Assembly (NCBI RefSeq): GCF_000315625.1 | Contig: NW_005434662.1 | Coordinates: 920,092 to 954,309, forward strand | DNA from: Guillardia theta CCMP2712 | Lineage: Eukaryota; Protista; Cryptophyta | Direction: 5' to 3' | DNA length: 34,218 nt | Part shown: one piece after another, positions 27,848-30,800 of the stretch | How positions within the stretch are numbered: position 1 is the stretch's first letter | How the letters are laid out: each line of letters opens with the position of its first letter | Program-made: the position numbers and the translations under genes | Notes under the pieces: generated by a model | Database searches by the model: none | What the model was told of the DNA's origin: nothing | The model's input: only the letters and a program-made list of their open reading frames with translations

Positions 27848-30800
27848 ATGAAGGCTGCACAGCTTCTCCTCTTGGGATTTTGGGTCTTGAATCTGAAATA
27901 TGCATCATGCACCACATGCAGTGCCTTGACAGAAATAGATAAAGCTGACGACATGGTGAATTACGTTGCCAACAATCCGTACACCATTGGATACCAGGGG
28001 TATGACAGCCAAGTTCAGTTCGAGGCAGTCAACAACAATGTCATGCTCCCCCTGGTGCTGAATCGAGACAAACAATCTGTGAGTAAGAGGAGTGGAGGTT
28101 GGGGTCAAATGACAAGGAGGTCTTACTTGATTTAAGGTCACCTACGCCATCCATTCTTTGAGTTCCACCATCCTGCACAAAGCTGCAGTCTTTGAGAAAC
28201 CTTCCCTGGGAGAATGTCCAGAGGTTGGAATCTGTACTTCCCTCCTTACCGACAAGTATGAGAGCTGGCCGATATCGACCCTGATGTAAACCTGCTTAAA
28301 TTCACTTGTCACATTCATTTCTTTATCATCTGAGCTGTTCAAACCCAGGTACGTGCTTGTTCCGACGAAAACAATTACTCCGGATCCGCAAGTCTGCAGA
28401 AATATGCGCGGGCTGTACGAGTTTCTAGTGTGGATCCTAACCACTGTTGGTGGAAATACAGTGAGTTGAGCTTCTTCTAACACATATGCCGCTATTCCTC
28501 ACAAGAAAGTGACTTTTTGGTCCTTGCAGGTTGCAAATTCGAACTACTTTGCAAGTATACCCGATCAGCTGAAACCATATGTAGGTTCGATCGCTGTCCA
28601 TGTCCTGTTGCTGATTTGAGTATGTCAGGTGCTGCAGGAGTTGGAGATGATGACTTGTAACGGCGCTCCAGTTGCTAACTTGACCTCCATCGGGAAACAG
28701 GAAGGCTTCACCATCCAGGGGGAAGGGAGCTCGTTGGGCCAAGGGCTCTATGACGCCATGATCGCCGCGTATCAAGGGGATACTGAAAACTTGTACAAGC
28801 CCTTGAACATCTTGTACCAAGGTTCAGGCTCAGGTGAGAGAACTTCAGAAGCACTGCGGGTCTCTATGAACAAACATGACATGCATGAAGGCAATGGGCT
28901 GAGAGCGATGAACAACTGCTCCATCGATTTTGCAACAGTGGATGCGATAACCTTTGATGGAGAGCCCATAGCCCACACCTTCTCCCCGTGCGCCAGGTAT
29001 TGCTACGACATTCATGCGACAGGTCTGTGCTCTGATGGGCGAACTTGTGGTTGCAGAGACAGGAGAGTGAGAGTGATCCCCTTGTTCACCACGTTCATCA
29101 CCTTCTTTGTGAACTTGCGTTCGGCCAACGTGACCTCCCTCTACCTATCCGGCGATGTTCTCAACGGAATCTTCACGGGAAACATCACATGCTGGAATGA
29201 CAAGAGAATTCAGCGGGACAATCCTGGTGTGGCGTTGCCAGGCAGGCCGGTGCTGCGAGTTGTCAGAAAGGGGTCGTGCGGGAGCTCCTTTATGCTGTCT
29301 AACGCCCTGCCTTACTTTGCCAACCAAACGTGCCAGCAGCACATCCTCCATTGCTCCGACAGGCCTCCATGGCCTGCTCCTACCATGGACCCGAACTCGT
29401 TCTCCAGCCCTTGCCCCTGCACCGATCCTCCTCAAATCTCGTACTCTTTCTGGTCTCAGAAGAACATCCTGGCGATCTCAGTGGGCGGCTTTGCGTGTGT
29501 GCTCCTGTTGCTGGGCTTGTGGATCTTCCTCTATGTCAAGCAGCGACAGCAGCGAGCAGACGCCATCTGGGAGATCAGGCGCGACGAGCTGCACATAGCT
29601 GAGCCTCCCGACGTGCTGGGGTACGGGGCCTTCGGCCTGGTGGTCAAGGCCAACTACAGGGGTACCAGTGTGGCGGTAAAGCGCGTGCTGCCTGCCTCCT
29701 CGAAAGGGAAACGAGACTCTGCATTTGAGTTCTCTAAAGCCCTTCACCCGAGTGCGGAGGAGAACAAGGAAACCCTGGCTAGGAACGACTCAGTGGGGAG
29801 CAGACGCAGCAGCAGCAGCAGCAGGCAGCGGAACTCTGGGCTGAGCTCACAGGTGGCACGAATGTCAAGCTCCAAGTCTATCATAGGAACCATGTCTATC
29901 CGAGAGAACGTCAGGAAAAGCTTCGGGCTGCTGAGGAGCAGCCTGTACGCCAGACTCCGCAGCGACTTCATTGAGGAGATGCGGACCCTCTCGAAACTTC
30001 GACATCCCTGCATCGTTACCCTCATGGGGGCTGTGGTGGCTAAGGAGCAGGAGCCTCTGCTGGTGATGGAGCTCATGGTCTTCGGCTCCTTGTACGACCT
30101 CATCCACAACGAGACAGCTCGACTGGAAGGAGAGCTCGTCGTTCCGATCCTCAACGACGTTGCGCAGGGCGTGAAATTCCTCCATGCCGCCACCCCCTTC
30201 ATCCTCCATGGCGACCTCAAGGCTCAGAACATCCTGGTGGACTCGAGCTTCCGTGGCAAGGTTTCCGACTTCGGCCTCTCCCACAAGGTCCAGGCGAAGA
30301 GCTGGACACTTGGCTGGACGACGCAGGTGCAGGGGGTGGGAACGCCTTTCTGGATGGCTCCCGAGCTCCTGAATGGCGAGAAAAACACGATCAAGACTGA
30401 CACGTTCGCCTTCGGGATCCTCTTGTGGGAGGTTTACAGCCGTCAGGAGCCCTACGATGGAGAGGACCTGCAGACAGTGCTGAAGGAGGTGGCCGACCTG
30501 ACCCTCGCTGAGCCCAAGAGGCCCAAGATCCCTCCCAACATCCCCAAGCACGCTGTCACTCTGATGGAGGACTGCTGGCACAACGACCCTGCCACTCGCC
30601 CGACCTTCAACGAGATTGCAAGGCGAGTGCAGGCCATCGACGAGGACAGCTTCCCTCTCCACCACCTTCACACCAACGGCTCTCCCTTCCACCCCCTCCG
30701 AACTAGTTCGAGCAGATCGCAATTTCCAAGTGTAAGCAGCGCCACAAGCTCGACGCTCCTCCTGGATCGAGACCTGCAGGACGGGAGCGAACACCACAGC

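What the first reader, a model, noticed from the sequence alone, without database searches (positions are those of the whole stretch)
27848..29400. Receptor ectodomain is a circularly permuted PstS-type binding protein
Seen: directly after the signal peptide, the spliced exons read DDMVNYVANNPYTIGY...LVLNRDKQSV...YESWPISTLMYVLVP...GLYEFLVWILT...NYFASIPDQLKPYVLQELEMMTCNG. Then follow FTIQGEGSSL..LYDAMIAAY..ILYQGSGSG..IDFATVDA..IPLF..LYLSGDVLNGIFTGNITCWND..NPGVALP..VVRKGSCGSSF..PPWP, and then the TM helix. Known: in PstS the order is GAGA(T/S), GSG, DF..SD, ITxWND, RxDxSGT, WP, V...PGxIGY, YPI, FxxW, YxxLP. Here the second block (IGY to YxxLP) precedes the first, and the cut point lies just after WP. 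Inference: this is a single complete but permuted PstS domain, probably derived by trimming a tandem PstS-PstS ectodomain, with the new C-terminus wired to the membrane helix.
Basis: partly seen in the sequence, partly recalled or inferred. Interest (0 to 1): 0.85.

Follow-up and report, generated by a model that had tools for sequence, protein, structure and literature searches.

The report
Circularly permuted PstS receptor ectodomain
The outer part of this membrane receptor is a phosphate-binding-protein (PstS) fold whose second half is encoded before its first half; the same rearranged module occurs in a Guillardia theta gene and an uncultured eukaryote, so it is a real, conserved and apparently undescribed sensor domain.

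Summary
Confirmed. The gene at 27848-31567 (+) has 8 exons and 7 GT-AG introns of 47-69 nt. It encodes a signal peptide, a PstS-like ectodomain, one TM helix, a protein kinase and a class III cyclase.

A PstS profile built here matches the spliced protein twice, in swapped order:
- aa 31-190 match profile positions 207-344 (E 3e-14).
- aa 202-394 match profile positions 25-203 (E 1e-47).
There is no gap or overlap, and the cut lies just after the WP motif. No other PstS-like piece exists in the 34-kb window, so missing upstream exons are very unlikely.

The same order, cut point, 14-residue linker, cysteine pattern and four to five intron positions recur in a mis-annotated Guillardia theta gene. 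The order and cut recur in a metagenomic eukaryote, where the module sits on a TRP-like channel. Ordinary tandem PstS receptors are common in other protists, which fits an origin by duplication and trimming, but an old one, not specific to this gene.

Most phosphate-ligand residues are kept, so a phosphate or oxyanion sensor is the likeliest function (inferred).

Not shown:
- Splicing: RNA reads were too few.
- The fold of this protein: the spliced sequence has no reference, so it was not folded.

The scan noted one more such gene elsewhere in this genome (s1-430656, unchecked).

The parts
27848..27910 (+). Start codon and signal peptide (aa 1-21; hydrophobic core AAQLLLLGFWVLNL). An in-frame stop lies at 27806-27808.
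   Evidence: Sequence reading. The equivalent N-terminal hydrophobic segment stands directly before the C-half in L003 (G. theta) and L002.
27938..28655 (+). Block A, the PstS C-terminal half (aa 31-190, profile 207-344). Motifs: PYTIGY, WPISTLMYVLVP, YEFLVW, YFASIP. It is spread over exons 1-5.
   Evidence: hmmsearch E 3e-14, 40 bits. BLASTP to P0086 residues 188-343.
28656..28706 (+). End-of-domain Cys motif (CNG) and the 14-residue linker APVANLTSIGKQEG, which joins the old C-terminus to the old N-terminus. It carries an N-glycosylation sequon.
   Evidence: Alignment with G. theta, which has CNG followed by 14 residues including NIT. Coordinates.
28689..29384 (+). Block B, the PstS N-terminal half (aa 202-394, profile 25-203). 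Motifs: GEGSS, GSGSG, DFATVDA, ITCWND, VVRKGSCGSS, PPWP. It lies in exons 5-7.
   Evidence: hmmsearch E 1e-47, 150 bits. TIGR00975 positions 73-150, E 2e-15. PDB PstS chains residues 79-151.
29385..29465 (+). Pro/Cys-rich stalk (DPN...PCPC) between the new C-terminus of the domain and the membrane.
   Evidence: Conserved in G. theta (DPN...PCPC) and partly in L002.
29466..29537 (+). Single transmembrane helix (ILAISVGGFACVLLLLGLWIFLYV), followed by KQRQQR.
   Evidence: Sequence reading.
29619..30626 (+). Protein kinase domain. GYGAFG, VAVK, HGDLKAQN, DFG and APE are all present.
   Evidence: PF07714 E 2e-53 and PF00069 E 1e-43. Motifs.
30891..31567 (+). Class III nucleotide cyclase domain, interrupted by the intron at 31350-31396. 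Both metal-binding Asp are replaced (FAEIYGY, ETIGATYM). Stop codon at 31565-31567.
   Evidence: PF00211 E 7e-37. Residue comparison with 120 relatives.
28079..28136 (+). Intron 1 (58 nt, phase 0). The other introns are 28286-28348, 28461-28529, 28581-28628, 28834-28890, 28997-29056 and 31350-31396.
   Evidence: GT-AG boundaries, and the profile alignment runs on across every junction. Introns 1, 2, 3 and 5 share position and phase with the G. theta gene. Intron 4 has the same phase and lies within 4 alignment columns. No RNA read spans a junction.

Best explanation
The gene encodes a type I membrane receptor whose ectodomain is one complete PstS-type (periplasmic-binding-protein type II) fold in circularly permuted order.

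Chain order (shown from sequence):
- signal peptide;
- old residues from about 190 to the C-terminus (block A);
- a conserved 14-residue linker joining the old C-terminus to the old N-terminus;
- old residues 1 to about 190 (block B);
- a Pro/Cys stalk, the TM helix, the kinase and the cyclase.
The cut lies in the surface loop just after the WP motif.

Geometry (inferred): both new ends sit side by side on lobe II, next to the membrane.

Ligand (inferred):
- All ligand-contacting positions of PstS lie in block B. Block A supplies the rest of both lobes.
- Most phosphate ligands are kept: the Ser/Thr of GxGSS, the Ser of GSG, Asp of DFxxxD, Arg of VVR and the G of SGT.
- Ser139 is replaced by Cys, Thr141 by Ser and Asp137 by Gly.
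- The likeliest ligand is therefore orthophosphate or a similar tetrahedral oxyanion.

Signalling (inferred): ligand-driven closure of the two lobes would be passed through the stalk and TM helix to the cytosolic part. The kinase keeps all catalytic motifs. The cyclase has lost both metal-binding Asp, so the kinase is the probable output and the cyclase domain more probably serves dimerisation.

Origin (inferred): the permuted module is old and mobile. It is shared with a Guillardia theta receptor kinase, including intron positions, and with a TRP-like channel protein of an uncultured eukaryote. It most likely arose from a tandem PstS array by loss of the outer halves.
For: - Swapped, non-overlapping profile matches: 207-344 then 25-203. 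The same swap appears against a single ordinary PstS, P0086.
- No other PstS-like coding piece exists in the window in six frames; every other match has E > 2.
- The signal peptide lies directly before block A, and the TM helix follows the WP motif at the end of block B after a 30-residue stalk.
- The same order and cut point occur in G. theta locus L003 (aa 59-217 = profile 207-342; aa 239-419 = profile 29-204). L003 has no PstS piece in the 9 kb upstream.
- The same order occurs in metagenome contig L002: profile 234-338, then 23-79 and 81-211.
- The ectodomains are 33-37% identical. The Cys pattern is shared. The window gene and the G. theta gene share the 14-residue linker, the PCPC stalk, and four introns with the same position and phase (a fifth has the same phase and lies within 4 alignment columns).
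- The C-halves of the three proteins form a clade with support 0.93.
- Tandem PstS receptors occur in Entosiphon, Rhabdomonas, Chromosphaera and Fabomonas. The Fabomonas protein has the same kinase-cyclase tail.
- A segment of the Fabomonas tandem running from the C-half of repeat 1 to the N-half of repeat 2 is predicted as one compact unit (pLDDT 80.8, pTM 0.83). Its best PDB matches are PstS.
- Ligand residues were mapped through the alignment to E. coli PstS chains and the profile.
Against: - No RNA read spans any splice junction. The gene is nearly silent in the runs laid (12 reads), so the exon model rests on homology and splice signals.
- The fold of this protein was not predicted, because the spliced sequence has no reference. 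The AlphaFold result is from a surrogate cut out of another protein, and its alignment could bias the halves together.
- Ser139 to Cys and Asp137 to Gly may change or abolish phosphate binding. In the L002 protein the ligand set is largely lost.
- The N-half tree does not join the L002 group to the window/G. theta pair, so a single origin is not proven.
Confidence: 0.75

Rival explanations
1. Domain-swapped dimer. The two halves do not pair within one chain. Block A of one receptor completes block B of a second receptor, so that two PstS folds are built across an obligate dimer.
For: Each half cannot fold alone, and either kind of pairing would satisfy the exact complementarity seen. Receptors that carry class III cyclase domains work as dimers (established knowledge). 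The cyclase here looks catalytically dead and might serve only to dimerise.
Against: The linker is 14 residues in both the window gene and the G. theta gene, and 19 in L002. A surrogate with only a 7-residue linker is already predicted to close on itself as a single unit (pTM 0.83). The L002 protein carries the module on a channel-like protein with no cyclase.
Confidence: 0.12
2. Decaying remnant. The ectodomain is what is left of a tandem PstS-PstS receptor after two deletions. It has no folded binding domain, and the gene is a little-expressed relic.
For: Very low RNA coverage. The cyclase metal site is lost. Block A scores only 40 bits.
Against: The reading frame is intact over 1105 codons and 7 introns. 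The two breakpoints coincide within 3 profile positions. The same architecture, linker, cysteines and introns are kept at 37% identity in G. theta, and the order recurs in a third lineage. That degree of conservation is not expected for a relic.
Confidence: 0.06
3. Gene-model artefact. Further 5' exons encode a PstS N-half, so the real protein has 1.5 or 2 ordinary tandem domains.
For: No RNA read defines the 5' end. AG dinucleotides that could serve as acceptors exist at 27920-27945.
Against: No PstS-like coding piece lies anywhere upstream in the window. An in-frame stop at 27806 is followed by ATG and a good signal peptide. The next gene upstream is on the other strand, and its transcript ends near 26620. 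Introns here are only 47-69 nt. Two other loci have the same start, a signal peptide followed directly by the C-half. One of them has 9 kb of PstS-free upstream sequence.
Confidence: 0.04

Closest known systems
Bacterial PstS, the phosphate-binding protein of the PstSCAB transporter (TIGR00975; PF12849; E. coli structures 1IXH and 2ABH)
   Same: Homologous over the whole fold. All sequence motifs are present. Most phosphate ligands are kept: the equivalents of Thr10 (here Ser), Ser38, Asp56, Arg135, Gly140 and Thr141 (here Ser).
   Different: The order of the halves is swapped, with the cut after WP. It is an ectodomain fused to a TM helix, a kinase and a cyclase in a eukaryote, not a free periplasmic partner of an ABC transporter. 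Ser139 is replaced by Cys and Asp137 by Gly. It also has extra cysteines and N-glycosylation sequons.
Tandem PstS-ectodomain receptors of protists, for example Fabomonas tropica EP00163_P033296 (P0008) and Rhabdomonas costata P0009
   Same: The same eukaryotic receptor-type PstS clade. The repeats end in C-(D/N/E)-G, as block A does. P0008 has the same TM-kinase-cyclase tail.
   Different: They carry two or more complete repeats in the ordinary order. The window protein has exactly one C-half followed by one N-half.
Guillardia theta GUITHDRAFT_61122 locus (JH993018.1; annotated only as fragments)
   Same: Same permuted order, cut point, 14-residue linker, PCPC stalk, TM helix and following kinase. 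Four introns share position and phase and a fifth lies within 4 alignment columns. 37% identity over the ectodomain.
   Different: A different species. It keeps the full SGT ligand loop. The annotation splits it into a 117-aa and a 105-aa piece, so the architecture was not visible. Whether a cyclase follows was not examined.
TpMglB-2 of Treponema pallidum, a naturally circularly permuted type I binding protein ('Type Ic/Cluster Bc', PMC4990184)
   Same: A natural circular permutation of a two-lobed binding-protein fold that still binds its ligand. The authors suggest a link with membrane tethering.
   Different: It belongs to a different class (type I, sugar-binding), is bacterial, and is a lipoprotein partner of an ABC transporter, not a receptor ectodomain.
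Receptor kinase-cyclases of diatoms and cryptophytes with other binding-protein ectodomains (PF01094, PF12974, PF13416, PF13458)
   Same: The cytosolic part is 41-46% identical over about 650 residues, with the same kinase-then-cyclase order.
   Different: None of the best 120 has a PstS-like ectodomain. 104 and 112 of the 120 keep Asp at the first and second cyclase metal site, and here both are replaced.

Membership tests
PstS / PBP type II phosphate-binding protein | Sequence homology to the PstS profile over both halves of the fold | tested here: met
   Profile 207-344 (E 3e-14) plus profile 25-203 (E 1e-47). TIGR00975 positions 73-150, E 2e-15. PDB PstS chains.
PstS / PBP type II phosphate-binding protein | Canonical linear order (N-half before C-half), and a score above the curated cut-off of the full-length models | tested here: not met
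   The order is swapped. The only exon long enough to score reaches 56.7 bits against a cut-off of 205 for TIGR00975, and 25.4 against 27 for PF12849. The spliced protein could not be scanned against the curated libraries because it has no reference.
PstS / PBP type II phosphate-binding protein | The eight phosphate-ligand positions (E. coli Thr10, Phe11, Ser38, Asp56, Arg135, Ser139, Gly140, Thr141) | tested here: inconclusive
   Ser, Leu (backbone contact only), Ser, Asp, Arg, Cys, Gly, Ser. Asp137 is replaced by Gly. Residues 79-151 were mapped by the alignment. The N-terminal motifs were mapped by the profile alignment, with E. coli numbering from my own knowledge. Binding itself was not tested.
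PstS / PBP type II phosphate-binding protein | Works with a PstCAB ABC transporter | tested here: not met
   It is the ectodomain of a single-pass receptor in an intron-containing eukaryotic gene. No transporter genes were seen around it.
Circular permutant of a known domain | Two segments that together cover the parent domain once, in swapped order, joined by a linker at the old termini | tested here: met
   Profile 207-344, then 25-203, with a break of 3 positions and a 14-residue linker. The same holds in two other loci.
Circular permutant of a known domain | The permuted chain folds into the parent three-dimensional structure | not testable with these tools
   The spliced protein has no contiguous reference, so it was not handed to the structure predictor. 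The only result is from a surrogate taken from a tandem relative (pTM 0.83).
Receptor kinase-cyclase (diatom/cryptophyte type) | Single TM helix followed by a protein kinase domain and a class III cyclase domain | tested here: met
   PF07714 E 2e-53 and PF00211 E 7e-37. 41-46% identity to family members.
Receptor kinase-cyclase (diatom/cryptophyte type) | Catalytically competent cyclase (two metal-binding Asp) | tested here: not met
   Asp to Glu and Asp to Ala. 104 and 112 of 120 relatives keep Asp.
Tandem PstS receptor (Fabomonas/euglenid type) | Two or more complete PstS repeats in the ectodomain | tested here: not met
   Only one C-half and one N-half are present, and no other piece occurs in the window.

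The most novel reading that the evidence does not exclude
The permuted PstS module is an ancient, portable eukaryotic cell-surface sensor for phosphate or oxyanions. It has been plugged onto different outputs: kinase-cyclase here, a kinase in Guillardia theta, and a TRP-like channel in an uncultured eukaryote. If so, these would be direct extracellular phosphate receptors of algae and protists, a class of sensor for which no molecular example is established.
Probability: 0.3. Interest if true: 0.75.

Novelty: new variant of a known kind. Interest (0 to 1): 0.62.

Why it matters
- Natural circular permutations of binding-protein folds are rare. The one precedent found is a bacterial type I sugar-binding protein (PMC4990184). 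I found no report of a permuted type II (PstS) fold, or of one used as a eukaryotic receptor ectodomain.
- The module escapes ordinary domain annotation. Pfam sees only a sub-threshold fragment, and the G. theta gene is annotated as scraps. Similar receptors are therefore probably under-counted in algal genomes.
- If the domain binds phosphate, these genes are candidates for how marine protists sense external phosphate, an ecologically important and unresolved question.
- Together with the tandem relatives, the family is also a clean natural case for the duplication-and-trimming route to circular permutation.

Tried and rejected
- The word-indexed protein search with the ectodomain part of the long ORF found nothing.
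- The exhaustive profile search gave no hit above 35% identity overall and no full-length permuted protein. It gave only the fragments P0005, P0029 and P0120, which led to the two loci.
- Two scans of metagenome contigs failed. The single-protein scan was blank. The alignment scan returned 80 loci with matches of 31-47% identity that end before the stalk. I took them for ordinary, mostly bacterial, PstS genes and did not analyse them. Two of them (L012, L049) are labelled human gut metagenome and were not opened.
- The giant-virus and viral contig scan was blank.
- Pairwise PDB searches with exon 1 and with exons 5-6 gave nothing useful. Pfam and NCBIfam see nothing in the short exons taken alone.
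- RNA reads: 12 reads, no junctions, so splicing is unconfirmed.
- DNA for P0120 and P0347 could not be fetched.
- The idea that the organism is Acanthamoeba was dropped. Its cyclase receptors have a cyclase flanked by two kinases, and the cytosolic relatives here are from diatoms and cryptophytes. The organism stays unidentified. One window protein is on a JGI transcriptome record.
- Folding the spliced ectodomain was left out, because the sequence has no reference and long sequences are not to be typed.
- The trees could not say which tandem repeat each half descends from.
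Full report
**Observation.**

The region 27848-31567 (+) holds an intron-containing eukaryotic gene.

- Reading the sequence and splicing at GT-AG sites gives eight exons: 27848-28078, 28137-28285, 28349-28460, 28530-28580, 28629-28833, 28891-28996, 29057-31349 and 31397-31567.
- The seven introns are 47-69 nt long, and the reading frame is open for 1105 codons.
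- The protein has these parts, in order:
  - a signal peptide (aa 1-21);
  - an ectodomain (to about aa 421) with five N-glycosylation sequons and 14 cysteines;
  - one TM helix (aa 422-445), followed by KQRQQR;
  - a protein kinase (PF07714, E 2e-53);
  - a class III cyclase (PF00211, E 7e-37).

**Is the ectodomain a permuted PstS?**

Curated models see only the longest ectodomain exon, because the other exons are too short alone.

- TIGR00975 PstS matches at positions 73-150 (E 2e-15). PF12849 matches at positions 84-156.
- PDB PstS chains match at residues 79-151.

I therefore built a PstS profile from 39 single-domain PstS proteins returned by the exhaustive search and scored the spliced protein.

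- It matches twice: aa 31-190 to profile 207-344, and aa 202-394 to profile 25-203. The E-values are 3e-14 and 1e-47.
- The two matches cover the profile once, in swapped order. The break is at 203/207, immediately after the WP motif and before the GN.GV...IGY motif.
- The profile alignment runs on smoothly across every exon junction, which supports the splice choices.
- BLASTP against one ordinary 354-aa PstS shows the same swap: block A to residues 188-343 and block B to residues 24-193.

**Could ordinary halves be hidden elsewhere?**

- A six-frame profile scan of the whole window finds PstS signal only in this gene's exons. All other matches have E > 2.
- An in-frame stop (27806-27808) precedes the ATG, and the signal peptide abuts block A.
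- The next gene upstream is on the opposite strand. RNA contigs of that gene end near 26620.
- After WP the chain runs through a 30-residue Pro/Cys stalk straight into the TM helix, in one exon.
- RNA support for the receptor gene itself is missing. Only 12 reads of one run lie on it, and none spans a junction.

**Relatives.**

No close relative is in the protein collections. The best hits to block B fall into two kinds.

*Ordinary tandem PstS receptors.*

- Long protist proteins carry two to four ordinary PstS repeats. They come from Entosiphon, Rhabdomonas, Chromosphaera and Fabomonas.
- Among the other long hits to block B are proteins with PstS-type ectodomains on class C GPCR bundles (one is from Plasmodiophora), on an RGS domain or on a cyclase.
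- The Fabomonas protein has two PstS repeats, a TM helix, a kinase and a cyclase. That is the same tail as here.
- Many of these repeats end in C-(D/N/E)-G, as block A does (MTCNG).

*Short fragments that lead to permuted loci.* The fragments are P0005, P0029 and P0120, and their genomic loci show the permuted order.

- P0005 is GUITHDRAFT_61122 (partial) of Guillardia theta.
  - Splicing locus L003 gives an N-terminal hydrophobic segment, a C-half (profile 207-342), MKCNG, a 14-residue linker with an NIT sequon, an N-half (profile 29-204), PDWP, a DPN...PCPC stalk, a TM helix and a kinase.
  - No PstS piece lies in the 9 kb upstream.
  - The ectodomain is 37% identical to the window protein.
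  - Four of its five introns sit at the same position and phase as introns of the window gene. The fifth has the same phase and lies within 4 alignment columns.
- P0029 lies on metagenome contig L002. There a signal peptide is followed by a C-half (profile 234-338), MKCAN, a 19-residue linker and an N-half (profile 23-79 and 81-211) ending in TWP. After that come ephrin-receptor-like Cys-rich repeats and a TRP-like channel domain.

In trees, the three C-halves form a clade (support 0.93). The N-halves of the window and G. theta proteins pair (0.99). Both groups lie inside the eukaryotic receptor-type PstS domains, and the L002 N-half group is not resolved as their sister.

The cytosolic part of the window protein belongs to the large diatom/cryptophyte receptor kinase-cyclase family (41-46% identity). 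None of its 120 best members has a PstS ectodomain.

**What this means.**

- Half a PstS fold cannot stand alone. Three divergent genes each keep exactly one C-half and one N-half, cut at the same loop. The window and G. theta genes also keep the linker length, the Cys pattern and the intron positions. This is what selection for one complete, permuted domain would produce. Two random truncations would not be expected to produce it.
- The module has been combined with different output parts, so it behaves as a portable domain.
- An origin from a tandem array by loss of the outer halves fits the abundance of tandem relatives.
- A surrogate test also fits. The segment of the Fabomonas protein from the C-half of repeat 1 to the N-half of repeat 2 (native 7-residue linker) was folded with 16 equivalent segments as its alignment.
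  - It is predicted as one compact unit (pLDDT 80.8, pTM 0.83).
  - Its best PDB matches are PstS.
  - This shows feasibility only. It is not a model of the window protein.
- From the known PstS structure (my knowledge of Luecke and Quiocho's domain assignment), the cut lies in lobe II. Both new termini and the membrane stalk would therefore attach to lobe II. The linker adds a fourth crossing between the lobes.
- A conserved Cys just after the signal peptide and the conserved stalk cysteines could tie the new ends together. This is speculation.

**Function.**

- All phosphate-contacting positions lie in block B.
- By the alignments, the window protein keeps the equivalents of Thr10 (as Ser), Ser38, Asp56, Arg135, Gly140 and Thr141 (as Ser). 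Ser139 is replaced by Cys and Asp137 by Gly.
- The G. theta protein keeps the full SGT loop. The L002 protein has lost most of the ligand set.
- Phosphate or a similar oxyanion is thus the likeliest ligand for the window and G. theta receptors. This is inferred, not shown.
- The kinase has all catalytic motifs. The cyclase has both metal Asp replaced, unlike 104 and 112 of its 120 relatives. This agrees with the scan's note s1-430606. Kinase output, with the cyclase domain acting in dimerisation, is therefore the most probable signalling route (inferred).

**Rivals.**

- A domain-swapped dimer, in which the halves pair across two chains, cannot be excluded.
- A decaying remnant and a gene-model artefact are both unlikely, for the reasons given above.

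**Literature.**

- I found no report of a permuted PstS or of PstS-type receptors in these organisms.
- One natural permuted type I binding protein is known, TpMglB-2 (PMC4990184).

**Limits.**

- Splicing is not confirmed by RNA.
- The fold of this protein was not predicted, because the spliced sequence has no reference.
- The organism is not identified.
- The second locus in this genome noted by the scan (s1-430656) was not examined.

Noticed in passing
window 30918-30944 and 31050-31073: Both metal-binding Asp of the cyclase domain are replaced (FAEIYGY, ETIGATYM). 104 and 112 of the 120 closest kinase-cyclase relatives keep Asp at the two sites. The kinase motifs are all intact.
   Followed up: partly
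L002 610-5191 (ENA ERZ27229602 k141_394718): An uncultured eukaryote has a permuted PstS module with degenerate ligand residues. It is followed by ephrin-receptor-like Cys-rich repeats and a PF06011 TRP-like channel domain. This may be a binding-protein-gated channel. P0120 and P0347 are further members.
   Followed up: partly
L003 8895-11500 (Guillardia theta JH993018.1): The G. theta receptor is annotated only as a 117-aa PBP fragment (GUITHDRAFT_61122) and a separate 105-aa kinase fragment. The spliced model built here joins a permuted PstS ectodomain, a TM helix and the start of a kinase.
   Followed up: partly
proteins P0012, P0030, P0035, P0038, P0133, P0021, P0098: PstS-type (type II) ectodomains are fused to class C GPCR 7TM bundles (one of them in Plasmodiophora brassicae), to an RGS domain, or to a cyclase alone. 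Class C GPCRs normally carry a type I flytrap.
   Followed up: no
window 28834-28905: Intron 5 has two possible acceptors, both in frame (exon 6 starting at 28891 or 28906). Comparison with G. theta and the profile score favour 28891. Read-through without splicing is also open in frame.
   Followed up: yes
window 14125-16326: A leucine-rich-repeat protein gene. Its product (P0167, 717 aa) is found at 100% identity on a JGI transcriptome record (3300017164), so this neighbour is expressed.
   Followed up: partly
window 24506-26620 (- strand): The upstream neighbour gene is well covered by RNA contigs that end near 26613-26623. This marks the edge of the intergenic region before the receptor gene.
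   Followed up: partly
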